In this document: positions 4,200-41,223 of the stretch, in pieces | How positions within the stretch are numbered: the first letter of the stretch is position 1 | How the letters are laid out: the number at the start of each line of letters is the position of its first letter | Source of the DNA: Dendrobates tinctorius | Lineage: Eukaryota | Assembly: GCF_039654945.1 (NCBI RefSeq) | Contig: NW_027361792.1 | Coordinates: forward strand, 5,456,001 to 5,520,000 | Length of the DNA: 64,000 nt | Direction of reading: 5' to 3' | Program-made: the position numbers and the translations under genes | Notes under the pieces: model-generated | The model's database searches: none | Seen by the model: only the letters and a program-made list of their open reading frames with translations | Told to the model about the DNA's origin: nothing

Positions 4200-5275
4200 C
4201 CACTAATATTGGTGTATTGATCATTGATTTGTACATGTGAATGTGTGGGTAGACAAAGTGCCCTCGTACTACCATTTCAGGCTCTGGATTAGGGGTCCGT
4301 TGCAGCTGCAACTTTTGCATGCCATGCACACTTAGCAAAATTTTTTTCCAGTAATTTTTGCAGAAAAATTAGACACATAATTTGCAAATCACTAAATGAA
4401 AATATAAACTGGATGGCGCTCACTTAAATAAAAAGAAAAAGTTTTATTGTAGCAATGCAATTTTACAATAGAAATAGTGACACCTACAGACCGTTTTATG
4501 TACAACACATTAAAAACAATAATTTAGAACCTGTCCTGTTACGGTTTCATCCTCCTGTTTTCACTGGATTTTACCAGTAAAACATATTGCAAAGGGGGGC
4601 AATGAATGAAACAACATGTAAAAAGCTTTGACATCACTTCTCGATATCACAAATGGTTAAAATTGCAAAGAGCTTGTAAAACAAGCAACGCTGCAATTCA
4701 CGTTCTCAAAAATATAGGGATTTTTATTTTTATGGTTTACTGTCTTGGTTACCAGTCACTGTGGCGGTCCATCAGCGGTGGTTGATTTCCTAAGTAATGA
4801 GCACAGCACTTACAAGCTCTTTCCAATAGAGCTTGTAAGTGCTGCTGTGAAGCTGGCATCCAGCCGGCCTCGGTGCCCCTGCACTCCAGAACCAAAGCTG
4901 CCTAATCTAGCAACATCAGAGCGCTCACAGATAGGGCCAGTGGCGCCACCATGCTGCTGATCTGAACTGTCAATCATCCCGCTGTCTATTGGGGTATAAA
5001 GACATCATAAAGGGGGCTCCGAGGAGCCATAAAGGAGAGGTGTCCCCTACAAGCAGCTCCAGGACCCTTTGAACATCCATCCATCTGAATGGTCGCCATG
5101 TACAGTTCCTCCAGTGGCTGTCATAAGGGATATTCCTGGCTTTCCGCAGCAAAATCTTCCCCCATTGATGGCGCTGGGATTCCCATTTTGACATCCACTT
5201 TAAATAGGATTTTTAATTAAAGGTCTAGAATGAATCCAGGTCCCCGTCTCGTCCCCATCTTCCCATATGTTGCCC

Positions 5276-5513
5276 TCACACTTCCCCGATGTTGTCAAAT
5301 CCCATGTTACTGTAGTGGGTCTTATAAAAGCTCAAATCCGGTTGAATCGCCGGGAGACCCTTAGCCGGCTTGACCACGTTGTCATAAATGACGTCCTTGC
5401 TCGCGTGACTAATACGTCGGTAAATACTGGTGGTGTTCCACGTGGGTACAGGGGCTTGGGTGGTCTCGGGTGCGTGAGTTCTCTTCTCTCCCATGCAGCA
5501 GATACATTTATTC
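5276..5513 (-). CDS. Link-receptor gene exon 8: cytoplasmic tail and stop
   Basis: ttttattccccag acceptor; NKCICCMGEKR...SIYRRI...VIYDNV...HYSNMGFDNIGEV*; ATTAAA about 60 nt downstream (5212-5217). Confidence 0.8.
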
Positions 5514-7462
5514 CTGGGGAATAAAAATCTATATGTCATGTTCAGAATGATCAGAAAGATTCTTATCTAAGAATTCTAATGAGAAACAGCGCCAGCCTTG
5601 GGCAGAGGTTGCAGCTGGTAATGCAGCTTAGCTCGTTTTATATCATTGCAATACCAGGCAAGACCTATCCTTAGGGGTGGCGCTGTTTCATGAAAAAAAA
5701 AACCCTCCAAAATATATGAAAGTAATAAAGGAGCATGTTCTATTCCAATCCACTCTATTAACGAAAGCAAGGAGTAGCTCCGACTGCCGGATAAAGCCAT
5801 ACAGGTTTTTCATGTTACTCACCCTCTCATGAAGGCAGCGGTTAGAAGTAATACCACAAATATGAAGGCAATGATGCACCCGATGGCGATTTTCTTCCAG
5901 GCTGTAAATAACAAGAAGCAGAAGGGTGAGGAGGAGCCATCAATTTCATGGGAATGCAGATTTTTGCAGGTTTCCGGTTCCCTGATAACAGGGCTCTGAT
6001 CACATTGGATCCTTCCATTGGAGATATATGGAAAGTGTATGGCCGGCGCCACTTTATAGGCATATAATGGCATGTGTGGCCCATAGGCTCCGCTTTACAC
6101 AGGAGCAATCTGTCCCAACGTGTTAAGGGGCAGTCCCGATCCGTTGCGTCATTGCTGAGAAATCAATACTTTTATCCATATGCAAATCAGACTGCAAGTG
6201 CACGGGACGTTGATAATGCACTTGCAGTCCACGACTCCTCTTCAGTTCTCCCTGTCCAGTGTCGTTCTCATCTGCTCGATTGGCAGCTGTTGTAAATGAT
6301 ATTATCTACAAAAAAAAATCATCTGTCTCTGCAGGCAATCGAGCCGTACTGCGTTGGGCAACTGCAGAGAAGCTGTGGACTGCAAGTGCACATGAAACCG
6401 CCCAGTGCACTTGCAGTCAAGTTTACATATGGATAAAAGTAAGGATTTCTCCGCAATAAAACGACCGATCGGGACCATATAGGTGTCCTTTTAATTGACC
6501 AATACATCGCTACCTTCCGTCGACCCCTCAAATGCTCTCTTTGGATATATTCAGCATCTGCAGAAGTTTTAGAGGCTCATATGCCGACTAGACACAGCAA
6601 AGGTAGCCGACGCGTAATCTAGAAACTCAGATAGGACACATCTATCACTTGTCACCAGGGTGGAACTAAATTGCTGACTGTTTCCTGAAGAATTTTTAAA
6701 ATACTTTGTTAATACAAATAGGAAATAGAAACCTAAAATAGATCAAAAACAGCACAAAAACATCAACGGAAAATAATGAAAAAAAAAAAAACAAAAAAAA
6801 CCTTGAACATGCTGTACATGGCTGAATGATGGCGCTGGGCAGGTGGCATAGATTTAGCGCCAAGGCCAGTCCTATATATGTGGCTATGCGCTCGGCGTAA
6901 TGTTTAATGTGGAATTATATAACATACATATATAAAAGCACTAAAAATAATAACAGGAACTTACTTCGATTATCTTTTGTCACGAGGACATCAGATACTG
7001 TAAGAGAACAAAACGCATTACACGATGTTCCTTGCACGGAGTTCATGACATCTTTACCATACGGATTCCTCGCAGGCAGGAGAAACATATACTAAGGCCA
7101 TGTTCCCATGACGCCTTCACGGTTTTATCAAAAATTTCTAAAATTGATGCAAAAACTATGAATTTTTTGACCGTGATTTTGCAAAATTGCATAAAAAAAA
7201 CCTTATTCACGTGACGCTTTTTCTGCTTTACAAGATTTCTTTGACTGCGTTCTCACATTGTGATCTAAAATCACATTCACACATTTCATTTTTTTCTTGT
7301 TTTTTTTTAACCCTTGGTGCATTTTTTTTTTTTAATCTGCAGCATGTCAATTCTTTCATCATTTTTTTAATGAAGTTTTTCTCCATTGAGATCAAAGTGG
7401 GATAGTACAAAAAGAAAAAGGATCAAAATATGCATCTGCGGTTTTCTTGCCACATGTAAAAG

Positions 7463-7498
<36 letters not shown>

Positions 7499-10400
7499 CC
7501 TATGTGTGAACAGGACAAAAACAATGCATTTGTTTCAAAACTCCAGACAAAAAAATAGTGCATCCAAAAAATGCATCATGTGCACAGACCTCTAAAGGGT
7601 GTAGATTAGCCCTAGATTGAGGGATCAGTATTACAGACCTATAGGATGGCCCTGAGAATGAGGTCAATGGCTAAATACACATACATCATTTTTTGGGGGG
7701 CGAGACTGAAACCTTAAAAGGGTCAATAGGTTTAGAAAATCTATTTTCATATATTGTGAATGGTGGATCCTGTGTTATCTACTGTATATAGAGGTGTTAT
7801 CAGTCATTGTACAGGAGGAGGAGGTGAGCTGTGACATCACCTATTGTGAATGGTGGATCATGTGTTATCTACTGTATATAGAAGTGTTATCAGTCATTTT
7901 ACAGGAGGAGGAGGAGGTGAGCTGTGACATCACCTATTGTGAATGGTGGATCCTGTGTTATTAACTGTATATAGAGATGTTATCAGTGATTGTACAGGAG
8001 GGGGAGGATGTGAGCTGTGACATCACCTATTGTGAATGCTGGCTCCTGTGTTGTTATTAGCTGTATATAGAGGTGTTATCAGTCATTGTACAGGAGGAGG
8101 AGGTGAGCTGTGACATCACCTATTGTGAATAGTGGATCCTGTGTTATCTACTGTATATAGAGGTGTTATCAGTCATTGTACAGGAGGAGGAGGTGAGCTG
8201 TGATATCACCTGTTGTGAATGGTGGATCCTGTATTATCTACTGTATATAGAGATGTTATCAGTCATTGTACAGGAGGAGGAGGTGAGCTGTGACATCACC
8301 TATTGTGAATAGTGGATCCTGTATTATCTCCAGTATCTAGAGGTATTATCAGTCATTGTTCAGGAGGAGGAGGTGAGCTGTGACAACACCTATTGTGAAT
8401 AGTGGATCCTGTGTTATCTATATATACGATAGATATTATCAGGTCATTTCCCGATGATAATTCTTGTACTTATTGATTGTCTGGTGAATACTTACAGGCT
8501 GGATTATAGCAGAAGGCTGAACCTTGACTTATCGTATCATCACAGGAATTCTGTTCAAAATTCCCGCCGCTCACCTTTCCCACTCCCCAATTATACCAGG
8601 CAAGACTGCTGGAAGAAAAAGTACCAGCATGGTCACACATCGTATATCGCACGGTGTTACTATATGACACATATAACATGTAGGGATATAGAGACACATG
8701 GCAGTTTTCTAAAAACAGACAAAAGCACAGTGCCCCAGCTGTCCACAGGTTGTGTGCGGTATTGCAGCTAAGCTCCATTCACTTCAATGGAGACCAGAGA
8801 CAAACTGTGGATCGAGTCGGTGCAGTTTCTGGAAGAGAGCAGTCAAGTCTTTTCCTAATTCAAGTCAACGTGTTGCTTTTGAAAAGAATGCTTGAAAAGT
8901 TAGGGCAACAGCCAAAGTTTGTTGCATTTTTAGGATAAATCAGTTTTATTAAGACATTTGGAGACAAGATGCCAGGGTTCCGGCTTTTGTTGACAACAAG
9001 ACGTCTGGCCATACTGGTTGTCAGGTTCACAGCTGTGACTTCTACAGAACATCTATCTGAGATACATGCTGAGGGTCTCAGTAGTTCTGGCAGTTGTGAA
9101 CCAGGAGGATCAGGATGAACAGCACAGAATACCTCTCGTTCTCACACAATGGATCACATCTTACCTGCTGTTTGTTATGAGACCTTTATTCTCCTCCATC
9201 TCCTCTTTGGTGGCTATGGTGAGTCCACTGCCTGTGCAGGTTTTGTTGGCGTTTTCATAGGATGGGACAAGACTGGTAGGTATAGGAAGTATCTGAATCA
9301 TCCCTGAATGTATGGAAAGACCACATTTCATAAATGAACTGGTCCGCTGTGCTCAAACTGGTCCGCTGCGCTCAAACTGGTCTGCTGCTCTCAAACTGAT
9401 CTGTTCTTCTCAAACTGGCCTGCTGTGCTCAAACCGGTCTGCTGCTCTCAAACTGGCCCAATGCTCTCAAACTAGTCTGCTATGCTCAAAATGGTCCACT
9501 GCTCTCAAACTCGCCTGCTGCGCCCAAACTGGCCCGCTGCTCTCAAGCTAGTCTGCTGTGCTCAAAATGGTCCACTGCTCTCAAACTCGCCTGCTGCGCC
9601 CAAACTGGCCCGCTGCTCTCAAACTAGTCTGCTGTGCTCAAAATGGTCCACTGCTCTCAAACTCGCCTGCTGCGCCCAAACTGGCCCGCTGCTCTCAAAC
9701 TGGTGGGCTGTACTCAAACTGGCCCGCTGCAATCAAACTAGTCTGCTGCGCTCAAAATGGTCTGCTGCGCTCAAACTCACCTGCTGTGCTCAAACTGGCC
9801 TGCTGCGCTCAAACTGGCCTGCTGCGCTCAAACTGGCCTGCTGCGCTCAAACTGGCCTGCTGCGCTCAAACTGGTCTGCTGCGCTCAAACTGGTCTGCTG
9901 CGCTCAAACTGGTCTGCTGTGCTCAAAATGGTCCACTGCTCTCAAACTCGCCTGCTGCGCCCAAACTGGCCCGCTGCTCTCAAACTAGTCTGCTGTGCTC
10001 AAAATGGTCCACTGCTCTCAAACTCGCCTGCTGCGCCCAAACTGGCCCGCTGCTCTCAAACTGGTGGGCTGTACTCAAACTGGCCCGCTGCAATCAAACT
10101 AGTCTGCTGCGCTCAAAATGGTCTGCTGCGCTCAAACTCACCTGCTGTGCTCAAACTGGCCTGCTGCGCTCAAACTGGCCTGCTGCGCTCAAACTGGCCT
10201 GCTGCGCTCAAACTGGCCTGCTGCGCTCAAACTGGCCTGCTGCGCTCAAACTGGCCTGCTGCGCTCAAACTGGCCTGCTGCGCTCAAACTGGTCTGCTGC
10301 GCTCAAACTGGTCTGCTGCGCTCAAACTGGTCTGCTGCGCTCAAAATGGTCCACTGCTCTCAAACTCGCCTGCTGCGCCCAAACTGGCCCGCTGCTCTCA

Positions 10401-13400
10401 AACTAGTCTGCTGTGCTCAAAATGGTCCACTGCTCTCAAACTCACCTGCTGCTCTCAAACTGACCCGCTGCTCTCAAACTGGTGGGCTGTACTCAAACTG
10501 GCCCGCTGCACTCAAACTAGTCTGCTGTGCTCAAAATGGTCCACTGCTCTCAAACTGGCCTGCTGCGCTCAAACTGGCCTGCTGTGCTCAAACTGGCCTG
10601 CTGTGCTCAAACTGGCCTGCTGTGCTCAAACTGGCCTGCTGCTCTCAAACTGGTCTGCTGTGCTCAAACTGGTCTGCTGCGCTCAAACTGGTCTGCTGCG
10701 CTCAAACTGGTCTGCTGCGCTCAAACTGGTGGGCTGTACTCAAACTGGCCCGCTGCACTCAAACTAGTCTGCTGTGCTCAAAATGGTCCACTGCTCTCAA
10801 ACTGGTCTGCTGTGCTCAAACTGGCCTGCTGCGTTCAAACTGACCTGCTGCGCTCAAACTGGTCTGCTGCTCTCAAACTGGTCTGCTGTGTTCAGACTGG
10901 TCTGCTGCACTCAAACTGGTCTGCTGTACTCAAACTGGTCTGCTGCACTCAAAATGGTCTGCTGCTCTCAAACTGGCCTGCTGCTCTCAAACTGGCCTGC
11001 TGCCCTCAAACTGGCCTGCTGCTCTCAAACTGGCCTGCTGCTCTCAAACTGGCCTGCTGCTCTCAAACTGGCCTGCTGCGCTCAAACTGGCCTGCTGCGC
11101 TCAAACTGGCCTGCTGCGCTCAAACTGGCCTGCTGCGCTCAAACTGGCCTGCTGCGCTCAAACTGGTCTGCTGCGCTCAAACTGGCCTGATGCGCTCAAA
11201 CTGGCCTGATGCGCTCAAACTGGTCTGCTGCCCTCAAACTGGTCTGCTGCCCTCAAACTGGTCTGCTGCCCTCAAACTGGTCTGCTGCCCTCAAACTGGT
11301 CTGCTGCCCTCAAACTGGCCCACTGCTCTCAAACTGGTGGGCTGTACTCAAACTAGCCCGCTGCACTCAAACTGGCCTGCTGTGCTCAAAATGGTCCACT
11401 GCTCTCAAACTCGCCTGCTGCGCTCAAACTGTCCTGCTGCTCTCAAACTGGTCTGCTGTGTTCAGACTGGTCTGCTGCACTCACACTGGTCTGCTGCGCT
11501 CAAACTGGTCTGCTGCGCTCAAACTGGTCTGCTGCGCTCAAACTGGTCTGCTGCGCTCAAACTGGCCCACTGCTCTCAAACTGGTGGGCTGTGCTCAAAC
11601 TGGTCTGCTGTGCTCAAACTTGCCCGCTGCACTCAAACTGGTCTGCTGTGCTCAAACTGGCCTGCTGCGTTCAAACTGGTCTGCTGCGCTCAAACTGGTC
11701 TGCTGCGCTCAAACTGGTCTGCTGCGCTCAAACTGGTCTGCTGCGCTCAAACTGGTCTGCTGCGCTCAAACTGGCCTGCTGTGCTCAAACTGGCCTGCTG
11801 CGCTCAAACTTGCCCGCTGCGCTCAAACTGGCCTGCTGCGCTCAAACTGGCCTGCTGCGCTCAAACTGGCCTGCTGCGCTCAAACTGGCCTGCTGCGCTC
11901 AAACTGGCCTGCTGCGCTCAAACTGGCCTGATGCGCTCAAACTGGCCTGATGCGCTCAAACTGGCCTGATGCGCTCAAACTGGTCTGCTGCCCTCAAACT
12001 GGTCTGCTGCCCTCAAACTGGTCTGCTGCCCTCAAACTGGTCTGCTGCCCTCAAACTGGTCTGCTGCCCTCAAACTGGCCCACTGCTCTCAAACTGGTGG
12101 GCTGTACTCAAACTAGCCCGCTGCACTCAAACTGGCCTGCTGTGCTCAAAATGGTCCACTGCTCTCAAACTCGCCTGCTGCGCTCAAACTGTCCTGCTGC
12201 TCTCAAACTGGTCTGCTGTGTTCAGACTGGTCTGCTGCACTCACACTGGTCTGCTGCGCTCAAACTGGTCTGCTGCGCTCAAACTGGTCTGCTGCGCTCA
12301 AACTGGTCTGCTGCGCTCAAACTGGCCCACTGCTCTCAAACTGGTGGGCTGTGCTCAAACTGGTCTGCTGTGCTCAAACTTGCCCGCTGCACTCAAACTG
12401 GTCTGCTGTGCTCAAACTGGCCTGCTGCGTTCAAACTGGTCTGCTGCGCTCAAACTGGTCTGCTGCGCTCAAACTGGTCTGCTGCGCTCAAACTGGTCTG
12501 CTGCGCTCAAACTGGCCTGCTGTGCTCAGACTGGTCTGCTGCACTCAAAATGGTCTGCTGCGCTCAAACTGGTCTGCTGCGCTCAAACTGGTCTGCTGCG
12601 CTCAAACTGGTCTGCTGCACTCAAACTGGTCTGCTGTGTTCAGACTGGTCTGCTGCACTCAAACTGGTCTGCTGTACTCAAACTGGTCTGCTGTGTTCAG
12701 ACTGGTCTGCTGCACTCAAAATGGTCTGCTGCTCTCAAACTGGCCTGCTGCTCTCAAACTGGCCTGCTGCTCTCAAACTGGCCTGCTGCTCTCAAACTGG
12801 CCTGCTGCTCTCAAACTGGCCTGCTGCTCTCAAACTGGCCTGCTGCGCTCAAACTGGCCTGCTGCGCTCAAACTGGCCTGCTGCGCTCAAACTGGCCTGC
12901 TGCGCTCAAACTGGTCTGCTGCGCTCAAACTGGCCTGATGCGCTCAAACTGGTCTGCTGCCCTCTAACTGGTCTGCTGCCCTCTAACTGGTCTGCTGCCC
13001 TCTAACTGGTCTGCTGCCCTCAAACTGGTCTGCTGCCCTCAAACTGGTCTGCTGCCCTCAAACTGGTCTGCTGCCCTCAAACTGGTCTGCTGCCCTCAAA
13101 CTGGTCTGCTGCCCTCAAACTGGTCTGCTGCCCTCAAACTGGCCCGCTGCTCTCAAACTGGTGGGCTGTACTCAAACTAGCCCGCTGCACTCAAACTGGC
13201 CTGCTGTGCTCAAAATGGTCCACTGCTCTCAAACTCGCCTGCTGCGCTCAAACTGTCCTGCTGCTCTCAAACTGGTCTGCTGTGTTCAGACTGGTCTGCT
13301 GCACTCACACTGGTCTGCTGCGCTCAAACTGGTCTGCTGCGCTCAAACTGGTCTGCTGCACTCAAACTGGCCCACTGCTCTCAAACTGGTGGGCTGTGCT

Positions 13401-16400
13401 CAAACTGGTCTGCTGTGCTCAAACTTGCCCGCTGCACTCAAACTGGTCTGCTGTGCTCAAACTGGCCTGCTGCGTTCAAACTGGTCTGCTGCGCTCAAAC
13501 TGGTCTGCTGCGCTCAAACTGGTCTGCTGCGCTCAAACTGGTCTGCTGCGCTCAAACTGGTCTGCTGCGCTCAAACTGGCCTGCTGCGCTCAAACTGGCC
13601 TGCTGCGCTCAAACTCACCTGCTGCTCTCAAACTGGTCTGCTGCGCTCAAACTGGTCTGCTGCGCTCAAACTGGCCTGCTGCGCTCAAACTGGTCTGCTG
13701 CGCTCAAACTGGCCTGCTGCGCTCAAACTGGCCTGCTGCGCTCAAACTGGCCTGCTGCGCTCAAACTGGCCTGCTGTGCTCAGACTGGCCTGCTGTGCTC
13801 AGACTGGCCTGCTGTGCTCAGACTGGTCTGCTGTGCTCAGACTGGTCTGCTGCTCTCAAACTGGCCTGCTGCGCTCAAACTGGCCTGCTGCGCTCAAACT
13901 GGCCTGCTGCGCTCAAACTGGTCTGCTGCGTTCAAACTGGCCTGCTGCGCTCAAACTGGTCTGCTGCGCTCAAACTGGCCTGCTGCGCTCAAACTGGCCT
14001 GCTGCGCTCAAACTCACCTGCTGCTCTCAAACTGGTCTGCTGCGCTCAAACTGGTCTGCTGCGCTCAAACTGGTCTGCTGCGCTCAAACTGGTCTGCTGC
14101 GCTCAAACTGGCCTGCTGCGCTCAAACTGGCCTACTGCGCTCAAACTGGCCTGCTGCGCTCAGACTGGCCTGCTGTGCTCAGACTGGCCTGCTGTGCTCA
14201 GACTGGTCTGCTGCTCTCAAACTGGTCTGCTGCGCTCAAACTGGCCTGCTGCGCTCAAACTGGCCTGCTGCGTTCAAACTGGCCTGCTGCGCTCAAACTG
14301 GTCTGCTGCGCTCAAACTGGCCTGCTGCGCTCAAACTGGCCTGCTGCGCTCAAACTCACCTGCTGCTCTCAAACTGGTCTGCTGTGTTCAGACTGGTCTG
14401 CTGCACTCAAACTGGTCTGCTGTGTTCAGACTGGTCTGCTGCACTCAAAATGGTCTGCTGCACTCAAAATGGTCTGCTGCTCTCAAACTGGCCTGCTGCT
14501 CTCAAACTGGCCTGCTGCTCTCAAACTGGCCTGCTGCTCTCAAACTGGCCTGCTGCTCTCAAACTGGCCTGCTGCTCTCAAACTGGCCTGCTGCGCTCAA
14601 ACTGGCCTGCTGCGCTCAAACTGGCCTGCTGCGCTCAAACTGGCCTGCTGCGCTCAAACTGGTCTGCTGCGCTCAAACTGGCCTGCTGCGCTCAAAATGG
14701 CCTGCTGCGCTCAAAATGGCCTGCTGCGCTCAAAATGGCCTGCTGCGCTCAAACTGGCCTGCTGCCCTCAAACTGGCCTGCTGCCCTCAAACTGGCCTGC
14801 TGCCCTCAAACTGGTCTGCTGCCCTCAAACTGGTCTGCTGCCCTCAAACTGGTCTGCTGCCCTCAAACTGGCCCACTGCTCTCAAACTGGTGGGCTGTAC
14901 TCAAACTAGCCCGCTGCACTCAAACTGGCCTGCTGTGCTCAAAATGGTCCACTGCTCTCAAACTCGCCTGCTGCGCTCAAACTGTCCTGCTGCTCTCAAA
15001 CTGGTCTGCTGTGTTCAGACTGGTCTGCTGCGCTCAAACTGGTCTGCTGCGCTCAAACTGGTCTGCTGCGCTCAAACTGGCCCACTGCTCTCAAACTGGT
15101 GGGCTGTGCTCAAACTGGTCTGCTGTGCTCAAACTTGCCCGCTGCACTCAAACTGGTCTGCTGCGCTCAAACTGGCCCACTGCTCTCAAACTGGTCTGCT
15201 GTGCTCAAACTGGCCTGCTGCGCTCAAACTGGCCTGCTGCGCTCAAACTGGCCTGCTGCGTTCAAACTGGCCTGCTGCGCTCAAACTGGTCTGCTGCGTT
15301 CAAACTGGCCTGCTGCGCTCAAACTGGTCTGCTGCGCTCAAACTGGCCTGCTGCGCTCAAACTGGTCTGCTGCGCTCAAACTGGCCTGCTGTGCTCAAAC
15401 TGGCCTGCTGCGCTCAAACTGGCCTGCTGCGCACAAACTGGTCTGCTGCGCTCAAACTGGTCTGCTGCGCTCAAACTGGTCTGCTGTGCTCAAAATGGTC
15501 TGCTGTGCTCAAACTGGCCTGCTGCTCTCAAACTGGCATGCTGCGCTCAAACTGGTCTGCTGTGCTCAAACTGGTCTGCTGCGCTCAAACTGGCATGCTG
15601 CGCTCAAACTGGTCTGCTGCGCTCAAACTGGCATGCTGCGCTCAAACTGGCCTGCTGCGCTCAAACTGGCCTGCTGCGCTCAAAATGGTCTGCTGCGCTC
15701 AGACTGGCCTGCTGCGCTCAGACTAGTGAACCTGTCTGCATCCTACTGACCTCGATACATCCTGTAAGTAGAAAGTTTCGTCTACTATATCAGCAGCGCA
15801 AGGGAAGCTGGCAGGTTGTCTGAGAAGATAATAGTTCTGCAGATACCTCTGTGGATGGACTCACCTGAGGTGCTATTGACACAGAATGTGGATCTGATGT
15901 TCGGACAGTCTCTGATCAAAATACCAACATTATAATCAGAACACGCTTTAAATGGTGTCAGACGGAGCATGACAAGCCTCCTCTCCTCTATCCAGCCCCA
16001 CCTGGTTTAAAAAAGAAAGTTACATATCAGCTTTACTGTACATTTTCCCCCACGAAACAAAACCTCCCACCTCTCATTGCTGCAAACGATAGAGACTAAG
16101 GCTATGTGCACACGGTGCGGATCCTCCCGCCGATTTTTCCTGCGGATTTCTTCCTTTTTTTTGCAGTTTTACTGCGGTTTTCCACCTGCGGATTTGTAGA
16201 ATGGAGCAGGTGAAAAACTGCAGCAAAACCGCACAAAAGAAGTCACATGCTGCTTTTTATTTTCCGCACAAAAACAGCGCGGAAAAATCCGCAGCATGTG
16301 CACCGCGCTTTTTTTTTTTTTACATACGCTATAATGGTACTGTACATCACCTGCAGTTCTGCTGCGGATCCGCAGTAGAAACCGCACCGTGTGCACAGAG

Positions 16401-19400
16401 CCTTAGTGGTCCTCCATCTCTAATAGTAGAGTATCTTTTTAATGCAAAAAGTAACATAGTAACATAGTTATTAAGGTTGAAGGGAGACTTTAAGTCCATC
16501 TAGTTCAAACCATATCCTGTCCTAACTTGCCCTAACATGTTGATCCAGAGGAAGGCAAAAAAAACCCATGTGGCAAACAGTACGCTTCACACTGAGGGAA
16601 AAAATTCCTTCCCGACTCCACATACGGCAATCAGACTAGCTCCCTGGATCAACGCAATATTAATGAGACTAGTGTATATACCCTGTAATATTATACTTTT
16701 CAAGAAAGGCATCCAGTCCCTTCTTAAATTTTATTAGGGAATCACTCATTACAGCATCATATGGCAGAGAGTTCCATAGTCTCACTGCTCGTACAGTAAA
16801 GAATCCGCGTCTGTGAGTATGCTTAAACCTTCTTTCCTCCAGACGTAGAGGATGCCCCCTTGTCCCCGTCACAGGTCTAAGAGTAAAAAGATCATTAGAA
16901 AGGTCTTTGTATTGTCCCCGCATATATTTATACATTGTAATAAGATCACCCCTAAGCCTTCGATTTTCCAAACTAAATAACCCCAAGAGTAATAACCTGT
17001 CTTGGTATTGCAGACCCCCAGTTCCCTAATAACCTTGGTCGCTCTTCTCTGCACCCGCTCCAGTTCAGCTATGTCTTTCTTATACACCGGAGACCAGAAC
17101 TGTACACAGTATTCTAAGTGTGGTCGCACTAGTGACTTATATAGAGGTAAAATTATGTTCTCCTCATGAGCATCTATGCCTCTTTTAATGCATCCCATTA
17201 TTTTATTTGCCTTTGCAGCAGCTGCCTGACACTGGCCACTAAATGTGAGTTTGTCGTCCACCCATACACCCAGGTCCTTTTCAGTGACAGTTTTGCCCAG
17301 TGTTTTACAATTAAGCACATAATTATACATCTTGTTCATTCTACCCAAGTGCATGACCTTACATTTATCCCCATTAAAGCTCATTTGCCATTTATCAGCC
17401 CAAGCTTCTAGTTTACATAAATCCTCCTGTAATATAAAATTGTCCTCCTCTGTATTGATTACCCTGCAGAGTTTAGTGTCATCTGCAAATATTGAAATTC
17501 TACTCTCTATGCCCCCTACAAGGTCATTAATAAATATGTTGAAAAGAAGCAGGCCCAATACTGACCCCTGTGGTACCCCACTGCTAACCGTGACCCAGTC
17601 CGAGTGTGCTCCATTAATAACCACCCTTTGTTTCCTATCCCTGAGCCAGCTGTTAACCCACCTACACATATTTTCCCCTATCCCCAATGTTCTCATTTTA
17701 TGTATCAACCTTTTGTGTGGCACCGCATCAAAAGCTTTTGAAAAGTCCATGTACACCACGTCCACTGCATTCCCTTGGTCCAGTCCTGAACTTACCTCTT
17801 CATAAAAGCTTATCAGATTAGTCTGACAGGAACTGTCCCTTGTAAACCCATGTTGATATTGGGTCATGAGGTTATTCTTCTCTAGATACTCCAGTATAGT
17901 ATCTCTTAGAAAACCCTCCAGGATTTTACCCACAGTTGAGGTTAAACTTACTGGCCCATAATTTCCAAGTTCAGCTTTTGTCCCCTAGAAAAAGCTATTG
18001 AATCACCCTGTATTGAAAATTTAAGGAAAAAGATTGCTTATTCATAGAATCACAGAATGTTAGAGTTGGAAGGGTCCTCCAGGGTCATCGCTTTTAACCC
18101 CCTGCTCAATGCAGGACTCACTAAACCATCTCAGACAGATGTCTGTCCAGCCTCTGAAGACTTCCATTGAAGGAGAACTCACCACCTCACGTGGCCGCCT
18201 GTTTCACTCATTGATCACCCTCACTGTCAAAAAGTTTTTTTCTAATATCTAATCTGTATCTTTCCCCATTCAGTTTCATCCCAGTGCTCCTCATGTTTCC
18301 ATGTGCAAATGAGAATAATGATGATCCTTCTACACGGTGACAGCCCTTCAGATATTTGTAGACAGCTGTTAAGTCTCCTCTTCTTTTTTTGCAAACTAAA
18401 CATTCCCAGATTCTTAAACCGTTCCTCCTAGGACATACTTTGCAGTCCACTCACCATTCTGGTCGCTCTTCTCTGAACTTGCTCCAGTTTTTCAATGTCT
18501 TTTTTAAAATTGTGGTGCCCAGAACTGGACCCAGTATTCCAGATGAGGTCTGACCAAAGAGGAGTAGAGGGGGATAATTACTTCACGTGATCTAGACTCT
18601 ATGCTTCTCTTAATACATCCTAGAACTGTGTTTGCCTTTTTTGCCGCTGCATCACACTGATGACTCATGTGCAGTCTGTGATCAATTAGTATACCCAAGT
18701 CTTTTTCACATGTGCTGTTGCTTAGTTCTATTCCTCCCATTCTGTAGATGTAATTTTCATTTTTCTTGCCCAGATGTAGAATCTTGCATTTCTCCCCATT
18801 AAATACCATTCTACTAGTCGCTGCCCATTGTTCAAGCTTACCTAGATCCTTCTGAATCCTCTCTCTCTTCTATAGTGTTAGCCATCCCTCCTAGCTTTAC
18901 ATCGTTTGCAAATTTGATTAGTTTACCTTCAGTTCCCTTATCTAGATCATTTACAAAAAATGTTGAACAACACTGGTGACAGGACAGAACTTTGTGGTTC
19001 CCCACTGGAAACACTCTTCCAATTGGATGTGCAACCATTTATTACCACTCTTTGAGTACGATGACCGAGCCAGTTATGAACCCACCTAACCATAGTCTTG
19101 TCAATTCCAAACTTGGTCATTTTTTCAATAAATATAAATGAGATACTTCATCAAATGCTTTGCTGAAGTTGAGGTATACAGTACTATATCTACCGCATTT
19201 CCCTGATCCACACAGTCAGTGATTCCATCATAGAAGGAAATTACATTAGTCTGACATGACTTGTTTGCTGCAAACCCTAAATACTGTATTCTTATCCAAG
19301 TATTAACATACATGCTGTTTAATAGTTTGTTCAAATATGTTTCCTAGTATAGAAGTACGGCTCACTGGCCTGTAATTTCCTGGCTCCGTCTTGTTTCCTA

Positions 19401-22400
19401 TTATGAAGATGGGGACAACATTTGCCCTTTTCCAATCTTCTGGTACTTCTCCTGTTCTCCACGATTTTTCAAAGATTCTGGCTAGTGGTTTTGCAATTTC
19501 CTCTGATAACTCTTTCAGTACTCTAGGATGTAATTCTTCTGTACCAGGAGATTGAAATTCAGGTAAATTCGCTAAGTGTTCCTTCACCACCTCTCTGTTT
19601 ATGGATAGCATGGATTCTTTTATTCCTTTGATGGCACCGTGAAGATCAGTCGATGTTACAATTGCTTTCTTAGAGAACACAGAAGCAAAATAGGAATTGA
19701 AAAGTTCAGCCTTCTCAACATCATTTTTGAACACTTCACCCTTTTCATCCTGTAAAGATCAGGTCATAGTTTTCCAACCCACTTAAATAGGACCGGTCTT
19801 TTTAATCTGGTGTAAATACCGCTGTTCTCCTGAATCCGACAACGTTTTTCTTTTGTTCCCGTGACTCTCTGTTCCTGAGATATGGCCTCCTCTTCACTAT
19901 ATATAAATTTAGCCTTAATAGACAACTGGGTGTGGTCCTCAAGTAGACGCCCACAAGGAACATTGTAGACTCTGCCCATTTGGCTAAAAATTCCAGATTT
20001 ATAAACAGGAAAGAGGAGGAGATATCTCAGGAACAGAGAGGCGCAGGAACACAAGAAAAACTTCTCCGGATTCAGGAGAACAGCGGCATTTACATCGGGT
20101 AATTTTTTTTTGTTACATATTTATGGCAGATGACAGATCTTCTGTAAAGCATTTATCACTTATCCACATAAATTTTGGAGGTCTGATGAAATTCCCCAGA
20201 ATTAATTTAATGGAATAAAAAAGTATTTATTAATACAGAGATGTCAGGAAAGGTAGTAAGTTCTCTCCTGACATTTCTGTATGCGAGTGGCGCACAGGGC
20301 GGCACAAATCTGACACACAGCCACGGTCATAAGCAAATTACGGGTTTTCCCATATTGTCGGCCATACTTACTTGCAGAACTCGTAGCCCTTTGTAAACGC
20401 AACAGTGATATTCTCCAGTGTCGCCAGTCTGCTGTAGTGCGCGGCACAGGCCACTTTGGCGCCATCATAGTCTACTGAGATATTATTTGGCATGAACACT
20501 CCGGAAATTACTGGTAGGAAAAAAAAAATTAAGCATATTGACATCATTGGTTTTTTTTTTAAATAAATGTTAAGGGTTAACAATGCAGGAGTTGGTTTAC
20601 ATTTCCCCGTAGAGCCTCTACAGGAGAAACAGAGCATTACAAGCTCCCATTGAAATCTATGGACTCCCTGCGCAATGAATGGACGAAACGGAAAGAAAAG
20701 AAGGTTCATGAGCACAAGATTTAGCACATTGACGGAGAGATGCTGAAATGCATATGTTAGCGTAGCGCCACACTTGGCTGTGTTTGGTATTGCAGCTGAT
20801 CTACAATGCCTGATGCAATCTATGAGCAGAAGTGGAGCTGATATATGGGGACAATCGGCCTCCAGGACCCCTCTTTCCTGGGAATAGTTCTGGCTGTCTC
20901 TTCTGTGCCGTACGCAGCCTTAAACCACCCGTTACCCCATCGTTCTCAGAATCGTAAGGGTTCTCTGATGTTGGACCGCCACTGATTGTAAAATGATGGC
21001 CAATCCTAGAAATATGCTATTGCTTTATAAGATGGAAATAAACATTTTAACTACTTCTTGAACGGTGACGAGCGTGTATGTTGGGAGTGGTAGTAAGAAG
21101 CGAGATCAGGAGTGAAGCATACACCATTCACGGTCCGCACCGGCTGTGTTATACAGCAGCGATCGGAGCTAGCTCTGATCGCTGCTATTTAGCCACAAAG
21201 CAGAGCAATCGCGCCACGTAATTGTTACGGGGGCCCATCGCATGGTCATTTTTTCTATATACCGTAACACAGTCATGTCACAGAATCCAAAATAATCAAA
21301 ACAACTTCAGGTCCCATAAGAGAACTTAAAAATAAATTAAAAATGTACAAAAATATATATAAAATATATAAACACACATGTAAATCACTCTCATAAAAAC
21401 GAGACCCAAAAAAAGAATAGATGAGTTATGGTTTATTTATTTTTTCACGATTTTATCGCACTTGGAATTTTTTTCCTGTTTTTTTTCTCACATTATATGG
21501 TACAATGAATGGCACTATTAAAAAACTGCAATTATATACCTATAACTATATAAAAAAAAAAGTTACGGCTTTGTGAAAAAGGGGAGTAAAAGACGAAAGC
21601 GCAAAAACGCGGTCTTTTTATTTCCCTGTATTTGTATCAGAATAAAGTTGATTGTCCCCCAAACAGAGATCCCCCCCAGCGACCACATACATAGGTACGC
21701 TGGGTCGGGCTTAGCATATACCTATTTTCTACGGGAAGTCAGAAGTTTTCTGCTGACAGTGTCCTCCACCAGCAGCTTATCTTCTCTGAGCACAAAAGGA
21801 TTGGGCATGTTAAAATCTAACAGCCTGATCATTTGCCAAAGGGGGAAAAAAAAAACCTTATGACACCCCTTCCCATTTCTGTTTGGCTGGTTTAAGACCC
21901 CACTGAGTCTTTGAGCCTGACTGCTTAGTTGTTTGGGGCCTTTTTGTCCCAGGGCGGGGGTCTGTGATGACCCATCACGGTTCCCCATTTTGGCGTTTTC
22001 TCCAAAGTCTCCATTGCTTTAGCCACGGAGTATATAATAAAGAAAGAGATGCAAGGTTATTAGACAGGAACCTAATATATAAGATAGACCTGAATGGGAG
22101 GTAATAAGTGTATAAAACACCGGCATACGCCTTTAAGAAGTTACCCTTTAAGGGCTCATGCGGAGTGGGGTTGCAGTATTATTAGTGAGGCAGAGATGGC
22201 GGGTTTTTTTCGTAAGCCATTCTGTCTATTGCAAAACTATAAGAAAATGCTCTTGGGCTCTAATGCAAAATCTATAAAGAGGGGCCGCATTACAACTGGA
22301 TTTTTTATGTGCCGGCATATAATTGGTTCAACCTGGGGCCCAGGAGGTAAGGGGGCCACTAACACCTCCAATGCAGGTGGAATTGTGCATTATGTGGAGC

Positions 22401-22691
22401 TATTGGACTACAGAAGGGCCCATATATTGTTATTTTGCACAGGGGCTTCTTCTGTCTGTGTCCGCCAGTGTGTAGAGGGGCTTTTAGCTCCCCTCTGTTT
22501 TAATTGTTACCTCTGCACCCAATATAGCATAGTCCCTTGGTTACAGCCACAGTTGCCAAAATAGGGTAGAAAAAAAGCAGAGTGCTACGGCCAAGACCTG
22601 GTGGGATCGTCTCACCTTGTATGGGGTCTGCAGACGATGAGATTCCGATGACCGAGATGAGAACGCAGAGGTGTAAGGTTGGGGGAATCAT
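5276..22691 (-). CDS. Uncharacterised type I membrane protein with two tandem Link modules (CD44/LYVE1-like), 8 coding exons, 317 aa
   Basis: Exons 22691-22616, 20510-20372, 16001-15865, 9303-9165, 8608-8496, 6997-6965, 5901-5823, 5513-5276. All introns are GT-AG with compatible phases; total 954 nt, open to TGA. Protein: MIPPTLHLCVLISVIGISSSADPIQ VISGVFMPNNISVDYDGAKVACAAHYSRLATLENITVAFTKGYEFCK WGWIEERRLVMLRLTPFKACSDYNVGILIRDCPNIRSTFCVNSTS GMIQILPIPTSLVPSYENANKTCTGSGLTIATKEEMEENKGLITNSS SLAWYNWGVGKVSGGNFEQNSCDDTISQGSAFCYNPA LSDVLVTKDNR TWKKIAIGCIIAFIFVVLLLTAAFMRG NKCICCMGEK...FDNIGEV. Confidence 0.85.
5823..5901 (-). CDS. Link-receptor gene exon 7: transmembrane helix
   Basis: WKKIAIGCIIAFIFVVLLLTAAFMRG; 79 nt, phase 1->2; ttatttacag acceptor, GG|GTGAGT donor. 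Confidence 0.85.
6122..6495. mobile_element. Palindromic MITE (TTAA-flanked, Kolobok/T2-like)
   Basis: Imperfect inverted arms (tacttttatccatatg / catatggataaaagta); TTAA at both ends. Confidence 0.55.
6965..6997 (-). CDS. Link-receptor gene exon 6: 33-nt stalk micro-exon
   Basis: gttttgttctcttacag acceptor and A|GTAAGT donor; frame-preserving phase 1->1; encodes LSDVLVTKDNR. Confidence 0.65.
7752..8420 (+). repeat. ~90-bp satellite, ~7 copies
   Basis: Unit GTGAGCTGTGACATCACCTATTGTGAATGGTGGATCCTGTG...CAGGAGGAGGAG. Confidence 0.92.
8496..8608 (-). CDS. Link-receptor gene exon 5: divergent Link module 2, C-half
   Basis: SLAWYNWG...SAFCYNP ends with a Link-type AFCY motif; pyrimidine tract plus CAGCAG acceptor, T|GTAAGT donor. 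Confidence 0.8.
9165..9303 (-). CDS. Link-receptor gene exon 4: divergent Link module 2, N-half
   Basis: 139 nt, phase 1->2, same size and phase as exon 2; SYENANKTC....IATKEEM aligns with DYDGAKVAC....LATLENI; cattcag acceptor, AG|GTAAGA donor. Confidence 0.8.
9337..15725. repeat. 19-bp minisatellite (CTCAAACTGGYCTGCTGCG)n, ~335 copies, filling intron 3 of the Link gene
   Basis: Visible periodicity; produces the spurious CCAQTGLLRSNW ORFs in all three + frames. Confidence 0.97.
15865..16001 (-). CDS. Link-receptor gene exon 3: Link module 1, C-half
   Basis: WGWIEERRLVMLRLTPFKAC...VGI...TFCVNS aligns with the Link C-half (cf. CD44 YGFIEGHVVIPRIHPNSIC...GV...TYCFNAS); aaaccag acceptor, G|GTGAGT donor. 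Confidence 0.9.
16097..16405. mobile_element. Palindromic MITE (T2/Kolobok-like); related copies near 7093-7595, 25329-25762 and 46467-46808
   Basis: TIRs aggctatgtgcacacggtgcgg / ccgcaccgtgtgcacagagcct. Confidence 0.65.
16451..17985 (-). mobile_element. CR1 LINE, 5'-truncated, RT domain nearly intact (one frameshift near 17020)
   Basis: ORF 16869-17933 has QHGF, DFSKAFD, GVPQGSVLG, FADD and LVRPHLEY; continues in ORF 16669-16986 (RRLRGDLI, TRGH); 3' (CTATGTTA)n tail at 16451-16470. Confidence 0.93.
18042..19757 (-). mobile_element. Older, degraded CR1 LINE of a different subfamily
   Basis: Fragmented ORF2 (KAELFNSYFASVF, VPEDWKRANVVPI, NYRPVS, LVRPHLEY); 3' ATTCTGTGATTCTATGA tail typical of CR1. 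Confidence 0.9.
19780..20145. mobile_element. Palindromic non-autonomous DNA transposon; second copy at about 49265-49595
   Basis: Inverted arms ccgctgttctcctgaatccg / cggattcaggagaacagcgg in both copies. Confidence 0.65.
20372..20510 (-). CDS. Link-receptor gene exon 2: Link module 1, N-half
   Basis: Poly-T tract plus ctaccag acceptor; GVF...Y..A...C.....LAT......A...GYEFCK matches the Link consensus; donor AA|GTAAGT, phase 2 as in CD44. Confidence 0.9.
22616..22691 (-). CDS. Link-receptor gene coding exon 1: signal peptide
   Basis: gtcagcATG start; MIPPTLHLCVLISVIGISSSADPIQ has a hydrophobic core and small-residue cleavage region; donor G|GTGAGA, phase 1. Confidence 0.75.
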
Positions 22692-40823: not shown

Positions 40824-41223
40824 CTTGCAGCCGAGCAGCTGAGCGGGCGTGACTCCTCCCCTTCCCATTCACAGACTCCGCCCACCTAAACCCGAGACCA
40901 CGCCCTATCCGGCATTCATAACGTTGAAGGTGAGCGAAGGCTCCGCCCTGCATTGACAGGCCACGCCTGCGGGGAAACCGATTCCACGCCCCACACTGGA
41001 TTTCTAATATAAAATGCGAACAGCAGCTCCAGAACGTCTACATCACCGCCTCCTGAGAGGACCGCCCGCTGCACGCTGTGACCCCGCCTCCCCGAGGGTC
41101 CGAACGAGAAGGGCGACACGTAACCCCGCCCTTTCGTAGTGACAGACCACGCCTTCCCCAAAGACACGCCCCTATGTTTGTAGTATGGACCGTCAGATTA
41201 ACCTTCGCCCCTTCTGATTAATG

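What the first reader, a model, noticed from the sequence alone, without database searches (positions are those of the whole stretch)
5276..22691. Unrecognised single-pass receptor with two tandem Link modules
Seen: eight exons scattered among satellites and LINEs splice with GT-AG sites and matching phases into a 317-aa ORF with signal peptide, Link1, divergent Link2, short stalk, TM helix and a ~79-aa tail. No single ORF in the track shows it. Known: membrane Link proteins (CD44, LYVE1, stabilins, SUSD5) carry one Link module, and tandem Links occur in the secreted HAPLNs and lecticans. The phase-2 intron after C(K/R) and the 79-nt phase 1->2 TM exon match CD44/LYVE1 gene structure as I recall it, but the mucin stalk is absent. 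Inference: a lineage-restricted CD44/LYVE1 paralogue with a new architecture, possibly a glycosaminoglycan or pathogen-glycan sensor.
Basis: partly seen in the sequence, partly recalled or inferred. Interest (0 to 1): 0.92.

Follow-up and report, generated by a model that had tools for sequence, protein, structure and literature searches.

The report
Two-Link membrane receptor gene, unnamed family
The eight scattered exons are a real, expressed poison-frog gene for a single-pass membrane protein with two Link (sugar-binding type) modules; it belongs to an old, unnamed vertebrate family related to CD44 and LYVE1 that nobody seems to have studied.

Summary
Eight minus-strand exons (22691-5276) with GT-AG sites and matching phases give a 954-nt ORF of 317 aa. 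Spliced RNA contigs from three runs confirm four of the seven junctions. The protein matches a RefSeq model, "uncharacterized protein" of Dendrobates tinctorius, apart from a NAGNAG serine and a dubious 67-aa N-terminal extension.

Link1 is a canonical Link module (Pfam E about 1e-13). Link2 escapes Pfam but is a true, shortened Link module: hhalign probability 97.7%, E 2e-12; LYVE-1, TSG-6 and aggrecan hits at 1e-9 to 1e-11; AlphaFold pLDDT 92.5.

Intron positions and phases match bird CD44 and eel lyve1b, which I mapped here, including CD44's 137-nt exon and 79-nt membrane exon. The Link tree places the modules outside the CD44, LYVE1 and lectican/HAPLN clades.

The gene is neither unannotated nor frog-restricted. 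Relatives with the same membrane helix and tail occur in about 30 frogs, salamanders, caecilians, bichir, sturgeon, paddlefish and probably lamprey. Most non-frog members carry three Link modules, so frogs lost the middle one.

The ligand is unknown, and CD44's hyaluronan-contact residues are mostly replaced. The tail keeps a Cys cluster and an invariant C-terminal YxN motif. No paper on the family was found.

The parts
22692..22759 (-). 5' UTR (approximate start)
   Evidence: RNA contigs X1 and X20 hold 559 nt upstream of E5, which is 491 nt of CDS plus 68 nt. The limit is a contig end, not a mapped transcription start.
22616..22691 (-). Exon 1: ATG and signal peptide MIPPTLHLCVLISVIGISSSA|DPIQ; ends in phase 1; donor gtgaga
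   Evidence: Orthologues in other frogs start at this Met. No SignalP run was possible.
20372..20510 (-). Exon 2: first half of Link1, 139 nt, phase 1 to 2, ending in the codon after the second Cys (EFC|K)
   Evidence: Pfam Xlink half-domain, E 7e-5. Splice sites. All 12 sampled words present in RNA runs.
15865..16001 (-). Exon 3: second half of Link1 (WGWIEERR...TFCVNSTS), 137 nt, phase 2 to 1
   Evidence: Same length and phases as bird CD44 exon 3.
9165..9303 (-). Exon 4: first half of Link2, 139 nt, phase 1 to 2 (same size and phases as exon 2)
   Evidence: The donor at 9165 is fixed by the RNA joint 8608/9165 in three runs.
8496..8608 (-). Exon 5: second half of Link2, 113 nt, phase 2 to 1; NAGNAG acceptor (alternative start at 8605 removes one Ser)
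   Evidence: RNA joints 8608/9165 and 6997/8496. The 8605 form is the RefSeq isoform P0179.
6965..6997 (-). Exon 6: 33-nt stalk exon (LSDVLVTKDNR), phase 1 to 1
   Evidence: RNA joints 5901/6965 and 6997/8496; sequence.
5823..5901 (-). Exon 7: 79-nt transmembrane exon (WKKIAIGCIIAFIFVVLLLTAAFMR), phase 1 to 2
   Evidence: RNA joints. Kyte-Doolittle maximum of 2.97 at residues 217-235. Same length and phases as the bird CD44 membrane exon.
5276..5513 (-). Exon 8, coding part: cytoplasmic tail with the CICC cluster, PTWNTTSIY, VIYDNV and C-terminal HYSNMGFD, then the stop
   Evidence: Conservation of the motifs.
4420..5275 (-). 3' UTR (approximate end), poly(A) signal at 4448
   Evidence: RNA contigs run 516-598 nt beyond position 5000. 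Hexamer at 4448.
9337..15724 (.). Intron 3 filler: 19-nt satellite, 336 copies, ending 34 nt before the exon 4 acceptor

Best explanation
This is an intact, transcribed gene of Dendrobates tinctorius for a type I single-pass membrane glycoprotein of 316-317 aa. In order it has a signal peptide, a canonical Link module (module A) and a shortened, divergent Link module (module D). An 11-residue stalk, one membrane helix and a 78-residue cytoplasmic tail follow.

It belongs to an old, unnamed vertebrate family. The family shares exon-intron design with CD44 and LYVE1 but forms its own branch. The ancestral form had three modules (A-B-D), and frogs lost B.

Inferred mechanism, not shown: the paired Link modules form one compact glycan-binding head close to the membrane. 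An inter-module disulfide between an extra Cys in A and the homologous Cys in D probably staples the two together. The head binds an extracellular glycan that may not be hyaluronan. Ligand-driven clustering is then read out through the tail, via a palmitoylatable GNxxxCC cluster and conserved tyrosines. The main candidate is the invariant C-terminal YxN, which fits the Grb2-type SH2 docking consensus.
For: Gene reality. The ORF and splice sites are and the spliced contigs in three runs. E2 is present in the RNA runs. The protein is identical to RefSeq model P0179 and collinear with frog orthologues at 58-89% identity.

Link1. Pfam Xlink scores 49-60 bits against a cut-off of 27 in the orthologues. 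LYVE-1 and CD44 chains match at E 1e-7 over the whole module.

Link2. hhalign of the module D profile against canonical Link modules gives probability 97.7%, E 1.9e-12 over 75 columns. The module D profile finds aggrecan G1 at 7.6e-11, LYVE-1 at 1.2e-10 and TSG-6 at 7.3e-9 over the whole module. The AlphaFold ectodomain model has pLDDT 92.5. Both halves of it align in order to the tandem Link pairs of aggrecan, brevican and HAPLN. Exons 4/5 repeat the size and phases of exons 2/3.

Kinship. Introns are shared with bird CD44 and eel lyve1b. In the IQ-TREE tree, module A plus one lamprey protein form a clade at 96/95, module B at 98/95 and module D at 100/98. All three lie outside CD44, LYVE1 and the lectican/HAPLN clade, which has 99/97 support.

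Family spread and tail. The lamprey protein P0056 has A-, B- and D-like modules, a membrane helix and a C-terminal YDNIAYED.

Disulfide inference. Frogs have 5 + 3 ectodomain Cys. The extra Cys of A and the matching Cys of D are lost together in Spea and in Microcaecilia. hhalign places the two at homologous positions.
Against: No ligand, cell type or signalling partner was tested. CD44's hyaluronan contacts are mostly changed in Link1: R41 to N, Y42 to I, N94 to F, Y105 to L; only R78 to K and Y79 to W are conservative (residue roles from my knowledge of the CD44-HA8 structure). Pfam does not recognise Link2 from single sequences, and a shallow profile gave only 8% hhalign probability. I could not inspect model coordinates, so the inter-module disulfide rests on Cys counts and co-loss alone. 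The ITIM-like flanks of two tail tyrosines are kept only in neobatrachian frogs. Three junctions (E1/E2, E2/E3, E3/E4) rest on contig length, conservation and the RefSeq model rather than on laid reads.
Confidence: 0.8

Rival explanations
1. It is simply the frog orthologue of CD44 or of LYVE1, carrying an odd extra domain.
For: Link1's best solved relatives are LYVE-1 and CD44. The exon design is identical to theirs. FBXO3 is the neighbour. Automatic pipelines named some family members CD44 or LYVE1.
Against: In the Link tree the modules fall outside the CD44 clade (81/85) and the LYVE1 clade (83/76). The membrane-plus-tail profile hits only this family among 1.84 billion representative proteins. 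There is no mucin stalk and no CD44-type tail. Lamprey has a separate LYVE1-like protein and sturgeon a CD44-like one beside members of this family. Papers cited in PMC7504301 study CD44 in Xenopus, but I did not check whether that gene is a different locus from the family member found here, and my database search for a frog CD44 returned only sauropsid proteins.
Confidence: 0.04
2. The second 'Link' is not a Link module but an unrelated or C-type-lectin-like domain, so the protein is a single-Link receptor with a novel membrane-proximal domain.
For: Pfam misses it. It lacks the second and third canonical Cys and about 10-13 residues of the beta4-beta5 region. Structural Z scores are middling at 7.1 or less.
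Against: Profile-profile probability is 97.7%, E 1.9e-12. Its profile finds LYVE-1, TSG-6 and aggrecan Link modules end to end. All top structural matches are Link modules, well above the lectins. The two-exon unit has the same size, phases and intron position as Link1's.
Confidence: 0.06
3. It is a membrane-anchored offshoot of the HAPLN/lectican tandem Link pair, as the 'aggrecan core protein-like' labels suggest.
For: It has tandem Link modules. Foldseek aligns the whole ectodomain to lectican and HAPLN Link pairs. Some records are auto-named aggrecan-like.
Against: Pfam finds no Ig domain in any member scanned. Lectican/HAPLN modules form a separate clade at 99/97 that excludes all three family modules. 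Each module here is split by the CD44-type phase-2 intron, whereas lectican and HAPLN Link modules are single exons. That last point is from memory and was not tested.
Confidence: 0.03
4. It is a decaying or non-functional transcribed locus.
For: Introns are flooded with satellite and LINE sequence. Link2 is degenerate.
Against: The ORF is intact, splice sites are strong and assembled mRNAs are present. All parts are conserved across frogs, and module D and the tail are conserved across fishes and amphibians.
Confidence: 0.02

Closest known systems
LYVE1 (lymphatic vessel endothelial hyaluronan receptor 1)
   Same: Both are type I single-pass proteins with an N-terminal Link module. LYVE-1 is the best solved-structure match for Link1: E 1e-7 by sequence and Z 15.7 by fold. 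The intron positions and phases in eel lyve1b are the same: signal exon ending in phase 1, Link exons 1-to-2 and 2-to-1, stalk 1-to-1, membrane exon 1-to-2.
   Different: LYVE1 has one Link module plus a long mucin stalk (a 510-nt exon in eel). This protein has two modules and an 11-residue stalk. It lies outside the LYVE1 clade. The tails are unrelated. The positions I recall as LYVE-1's hyaluronan contacts are changed.
CD44
   Same: The exon design is the same, down to a 137-nt second Link exon and a 79-nt phase 1-to-2 membrane exon in bird CD44. Both have Cys residues next to the membrane helix. The locus lies beside FBXO3, which in human is in the 11p13 region that also holds CD44 (from my own knowledge).
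   Different: There are no N- and C-terminal extension lobes with a third disulfide, no variable stalk exons, and none of CD44's basic ERM-binding stretch or KIGV-type tail. R41, Y42, N94 and Y105 equivalents are not kept. It lies outside the CD44 clade.
HAPLN1-4 and lectican G1 domains (aggrecan, versican, neurocan, brevican)
   Same: Two Link modules sit in tandem. Foldseek aligns both modules in order.
   Different: Those proteins are secreted and have an Ig domain in front of the Link pair. Their modules form a separate, well-supported clade. The tandem arrangement here arose independently.
TSG-6 Link module
   Same: Both are minimal Link folds without extension lobes. The module D profile matches TSG-6 end to end at E 7e-9 and Z 7.1.
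   Different: TSG-6 is secreted, has a single Link plus a CUB domain, and keeps both disulfides and the hyaluronan-binding Lys/Tyr residues.

Membership tests
Link module superfamily (Pfam PF00193 Xlink) | Sequence passes the Pfam gathering score | tested here: met
   Link1 in the orthologues scores 49.5-59.8 bits against a cut-off of 27. Exon 2 alone gives a half-domain hit at E 7e-5.
Link module superfamily (Pfam PF00193 Xlink) | Four conserved Cys forming the C1-C4 and C2-C3 disulfides | tested here: met
   Link1 has all four plus one extra Cys. Link2 keeps only C1 and C4 plus the extra position. Actual pairing was not tested.
Link module superfamily (Pfam PF00193 Xlink) | The second module is homologous to Link modules | tested here: met
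   Single sequences fail Pfam. The diverse module D profile gives hhalign probability 97.7%, E 1.9e-12. It hits LYVE-1 at 1.2e-10, TSG-6 at 7.3e-9 and aggrecan at 7.6e-11.
Link module superfamily (Pfam PF00193 Xlink) | Alpha/beta Link fold | tested here: met
   The AlphaFold ectodomain model has pLDDT 92.5. The whole model matches LYVE-1 at Z 15.7 and TSG-6 at Z 14.0, the aligned part being mainly Link1. Link2 alone reaches Z 7.1 against TSG-6 and aggrecan. These are predictions, not solved structures.
CD44/LYVE1-type membrane Link receptors | Type I topology: signal peptide, one membrane helix, cytoplasmic tail | tested here: met
Hydrophobic N-terminus and one 19-residue window at 2.97 Kyte-Doolittle. 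SignalP and DeepTMHMM were not available.
CD44/LYVE1-type membrane Link receptors | Shared intron positions and phases (phase-2 intron after the second Cys; phase 1-to-2 membrane exon) | tested here: met
   The frog model was compared with bird CD44 locus L001 and eel lyve1b locus L002, mapped here.
CD44/LYVE1-type membrane Link receptors | Placement inside the CD44 or the LYVE1 clade | tested here: not met
   In an IQ-TREE tree of 78 modules, family modules A, B and D each form their own clade outside CD44 and LYVE1. Deeper branching is unresolved.
CD44/LYVE1-type membrane Link receptors | Single extended Link domain followed by a mucin-like stalk | tested here: not met
   There are two modules and an 11-residue stalk with no Ser/Thr/Pro-rich region.
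CD44/LYVE1-type membrane Link receptors | Hyaluronan-contact residues and hyaluronan binding | tested here: inconclusive
   By alignment, four of six key CD44 contacts are replaced and two are conservative changes. Binding itself cannot be tested here.
HAPLN/lectican tandem Link proteins | Ig-like domain before the Link pair; secreted | tested here: not met
   Pfam finds no Ig domain in any member scanned. A membrane helix is present.
HAPLN/lectican tandem Link proteins | Modules group with lectican/HAPLN Link1 and Link2 | tested here: not met
   The lectican/HAPLN clade has 99/97 support and excludes the family.
ITIM-type inhibitory immunoreceptors | Conserved [S/I/V/L]xYxx[I/V/L] motif in the tail | tested here: inconclusive
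   SIYRRI and VIYDNV fit the motif in D. tinctorius. Outside neobatrachian frogs only the tyrosines are kept, not the flanks. Phosphatase recruitment cannot be tested here.

The most novel reading that the evidence does not exclude
This is a third, ancient lineage of vertebrate membrane Link receptors, alongside CD44 and LYVE1 and older than the lamprey-gnathostome split. Its original head had three modules (A-B-D). It survives in lamprey, non-teleost ray-finned fishes and amphibians, but was lost in amniotes and teleosts. It binds a glycan other than hyaluronan and signals through phospho-YxN docking, for example as an immune or endothelial sensor.
Probability: 0.3. Interest if true: 0.75.

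Novelty: new variant of a known kind. Interest (0 to 1): 0.58.

Why it matters
Textbook lists of Link-module (hyaladherin) receptors contain CD44, LYVE1, the stabilins and a few others, each with one Link module. Tandem Links are treated as a mark of the secreted HAPLN and lectican proteins.

This locus shows a further membrane receptor family with two to three Link modules. It has a conserved degenerate membrane-proximal module and its own tyrosine-bearing tail. It apparently dates back to early vertebrates and was not found in mammals or teleosts in this search.

That gives a concrete gene to test in Xenopus or axolotl for glycan sensing, lymphatic or immune function. It also shows a Link module that has lost one disulfide and a hairpin yet stays conserved. 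Finally, it flags misleading automatic names (CD44, LYVE1, aggrecan-like) now attached to family members in public records.

Tried and rejected
1. My first alternative was a single-Link gene joining E2 directly to the exon at 8608-8496, giving 214 aa in frame. The RNA joint 8608/9165 rejects it.

2. I considered the candidate exons 'MARRLVVNK...' (about 9012-8900) and 'ENCHVSLYPY...' (about 8709-8609). They have no usable donor or give a stop, and have no RNA support.

3. The first AlphaFold run used 11 close orthologues and was poor (pLDDT 47). Foldseek on that model was uninformative. It was still useful later, because only Link2 had folded.

4. The shallow Link1 versus Link2 profile comparison gave 8% probability. 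The diverse profiles replaced it.

5. The look-up of encoding contigs for the Bufo orthologue returned no DNA.

6. A search with tegu CD44, meant to list a separate frog CD44, returned only sauropsid proteins in its top 120. Whether frogs carry a separate CD44 or LYVE1 beside this gene therefore stays unshown here. I have only the titles of cited papers that study CD44 in Xenopus and my own memory.

7. Paper searches for six LOC identifiers and for multi-Link membrane receptors found nothing on this family.

8. AFDB cluster search found no named protein with the whole architecture.

9. tblastn of fish and caecilian members against the window found no relic of the lost middle module in the introns.
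Full report
**The sequence**

The finding lies on the minus strand. Reading the candidate regions and joining them in a script gives eight exons:

| Exon | Coordinates | Length (nt) | Content |
|---|---|---|---|
| E1 | 22691-22616 | 76 | start codon, signal peptide |
| E2 | 20510-20372 | 139 | Link1, first half |
| E3 | 16001-15865 | 137 | Link1, second half |
| E4 | 9303-9165 | 139 | Link2, first half |
| E5 | 8608-8496 | 113 | Link2, second half |
| E6 | 6997-6965 | 33 | stalk |
| E7 | 5901-5823 | 79 | membrane helix |
| E8 | 5513-5276 | 238 | tail and stop |

All seven introns start with GT and end with AG behind a pyrimidine tract.

The introns hold LINE reverse-transcriptase ORFs (16.9-19.7 kb). 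They also hold a 6.4-kb satellite of 19-nt units at 9337-15724 and a 90-nt tandem repeat at 7752-8420.

**Transcription**

RNA runs of the same species hold the last exon and all sampled words of exon 2. I laid four runs on 5000-9200. Three of them, from the same species, each gave a spliced contig of 1.8-1.9 kb. The joints were 5512/5822 (cut +1), 5901/6965, 6997/8496 and 8608/9165, which are E8/E7, E7/E6, E6/E5 and E5/E4.

This refuted my own first alternative, a single-Link gene that spliced E2 straight to E5. It also led me to the true exon 4.

The contigs carry 545-559 nt upstream of E5, matching 491 nt of E1-E4 plus about 54-68 nt of 5' UTR. They run on to about 4400-4480, near a poly(A) signal at 4448.

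A run of a related species (X5) shows two of the same joints.

**Annotation status**

A search seeded from exon 2 found 310-316-aa 'uncharacterized' proteins in nine other frogs. They align end to end with the model at 58-89% identity.

A profile search then returned P0179, 'uncharacterized protein isoform X2 [Dendrobates tinctorius]'. It is identical to the model apart from two differences:
- One Ser is missing, because the NAGNAG acceptor is used at 8605 instead of 8608.
- It has 67 extra N-terminal residues from an upstream in-frame ATG at 22892. No other frog has these residues, and the RNA contigs do not reach that ATG.

So the window is D. tinctorius, and the gene is already predicted in public annotation but is unnamed.

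**Link1**

Pfam Xlink is significant in the orthologues (E 1e-13 to 3e-16). Solved LYVE-1 and CD44 domains match the whole module at E 1e-7.

**Link2**

Pfam fails on single sequences. A shallow profile comparison gave only 8% probability. A profile of 20 copies of the module, from lamprey to frogs (A5), changes the picture:
- hhalign against canonical Link modules (A6) gives probability 97.7%, E 1.9e-12 over 75 columns.
- The same profile finds aggrecan G1 (7.6e-11), LYVE-1 (1.2e-10) and TSG-6 (7.3e-9) end to end.

The AlphaFold model of the ectodomain, built with a 73-row alignment, has pLDDT 92.5. Foldseek aligns its two halves in order to the tandem Link pairs of aggrecan, brevican, neurocan and HAPLN, while CD44 and LYVE1 cover only the first half.

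In an earlier poor model only Link2 had folded. There, residues 114-192 matched Link modules of TSG-6 and aggrecan at Z 7.1, LYVE-1 at 6.2 and CD44 at 5.4, against 3.6 or less for C-type lectins.

Exons 4/5 also repeat the size and phases of exons 2/3, with the intron at the homologous codon.

Link2 lacks the second and third canonical Cys and roughly ten residues of the beta4-beta5 region.

**Gene structure compared with CD44 and LYVE1**

I fetched a bird CD44 locus (L001) and an eel lyve1b locus (L002) and mapped their exons. Both share the following with the frog gene:
- The signal exon ends in phase 1.
- The first Link exon runs phase 1 to 2 and ends in the codon after the second Cys.
- The second Link exon runs phase 2 to 1. 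It is 137 nt in CD44, as in the frog, and 140 nt in lyve1b.
- The stalk exons run phase 1 to 1.
- The membrane exon runs phase 1 to 2. It is 79 nt in CD44, as in the frog, and 70 nt in lyve1b.

FBXO3 exons lie on the same strand at about 32-41 kb, just upstream. That FBXO3 and CD44 share human 11p13 is my own knowledge.

**Family and tree**

A full-length profile search of 1.84 billion representative proteins gave 17 hits below 1e-30. The names show members in these groups:
- Many frogs, including Xenopus, Bombina and Discoglossus.
- Salamanders: Pleurodeles and axolotl.
- Caecilians.
- Bichirs, sturgeon and paddlefish.

Domain mapping shows that bichir, sturgeon, paddlefish and one caecilian carry three modules (A, B, D). 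Another caecilian carries five, and in the salamanders the middle module is weak or not detected. All share the same membrane helix and tail.

The membrane-plus-tail profile hits nothing outside this family except one weak lamprey match. That lamprey protein (P0056) has A-, B- and D-like modules, a membrane helix and a C-terminal YDNIAYED.

In an IQ-TREE tree of 78 modules the clades are:

| Clade | Support (ultrafast bootstrap / SH-aLRT) |
|---|---|
| Module A plus lamprey P0056 | 96/95 |
| Module B | 98/95 |
| Module D | 100/98 |
| CD44 | 81/85 |
| LYVE1 | 83/76 |
| Lectican/HAPLN | 99/97 |

The order of these clades is unresolved. Frog Link1 is module A, frog Link2 is module D, and frogs lack B. 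No relic of B was found in the introns. No amniote or teleost member appeared, which suggests loss but does not prove it.

**Function (inference)**

CD44's hyaluronan contacts are mostly replaced in Link1, so the ligand is open.

The frog ectodomain has eight Cys. The extra Cys of A and the homologous Cys of D are lost together in Spea and in Microcaecilia.

Across the family the tail keeps GNxxxCC next to the membrane, P-x-W-N-x-x-G-x-Y, and an invariant C-terminal Y-x-N. The Y-x-N fits the Grb2-type SH2 consensus, which is established knowledge and not tested here. The ITIM-like flanks are limited to neobatrachian frogs.

**Literature**

Searches for six locus identifiers and for multi-Link membrane receptors found nothing on this family.

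**Verdict**

The architecture and the kinship with CD44/LYVE1 by gene structure hold. The gene is, however, already predicted. It is ancient rather than lineage-restricted. Its two-module form is a reduction of a three-module ancestor. The ligand is untested.

Noticed in passing
window 9337-15724: A 19-nt satellite (336 copies, 6.4 kb) fills intron 3 and ends only 34 nt before the exon 4 acceptor at 9303. The branch point must therefore lie in that short gap or in the last repeat units.
   Followed up: partly
window 7752-8420: A 90-nt tandem repeat (7.3 copies) in intron 5 has RNA-contig word depths in the thousands to tens of thousands in all four runs, including the related species. It looks like a repeat family transcribed from elsewhere, not part of this mRNA.
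   Followed up: no
window 8605-8611: Exon 5 has a NAGNAG acceptor (cag|cag). The RNA contigs carry the 8608 form (317 aa). RefSeq isoform X2 carries the 8605 form (316 aa), and the orthologues in other frogs are likewise one residue shorter at this point.
   Followed up: partly
window 22692-22892: The public model P0179 starts at an upstream in-frame ATG (22892), which puts 67 residues in front of the signal peptide. No other frog has them, and the RNA contigs reach only about 68 nt upstream of the ATG at 22691. This is probably a mis-called start.
   Followed up: partly
window about 32000-40900, minus strand: FBXO3 exons (F-box LPSDPLLLILSYLDFRDL, RIHNGQKLVVPG, HYFFTYRIR, RYWRIT, YEYTSCTTF...PRFHMKCPTFRV) lie head-to-tail upstream of the Link gene.
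   Followed up: partly
proteins P0175 (Protopterus annectens, 1189 aa) and P0024 (Rhinatrema bivittatum, 1317 aa): These are giant unnamed proteins with 9-12 Link modules, a membrane helix and a very short tail. They are among the best hits to Link1. They may be an expansion of the same stock or merged tandem gene models.
   Followed up: no
proteins P0023, P0025 (Pelobates cultripes), P0013, P0016, P0018, P0021: Family members carry misleading automatic names in public records: 'CD44 antigen', 'LYVE1' and 'aggrecan core protein-like'. Pelobates appears to have two paralogues, one with a divergent tail.
   Followed up: partly
window 16869-19734, minus strand: LINE-type reverse-transcriptase ORFs (up to 371 aa without a stop) sit in intron 2, in the same orientation as the gene.
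   Followed up: no
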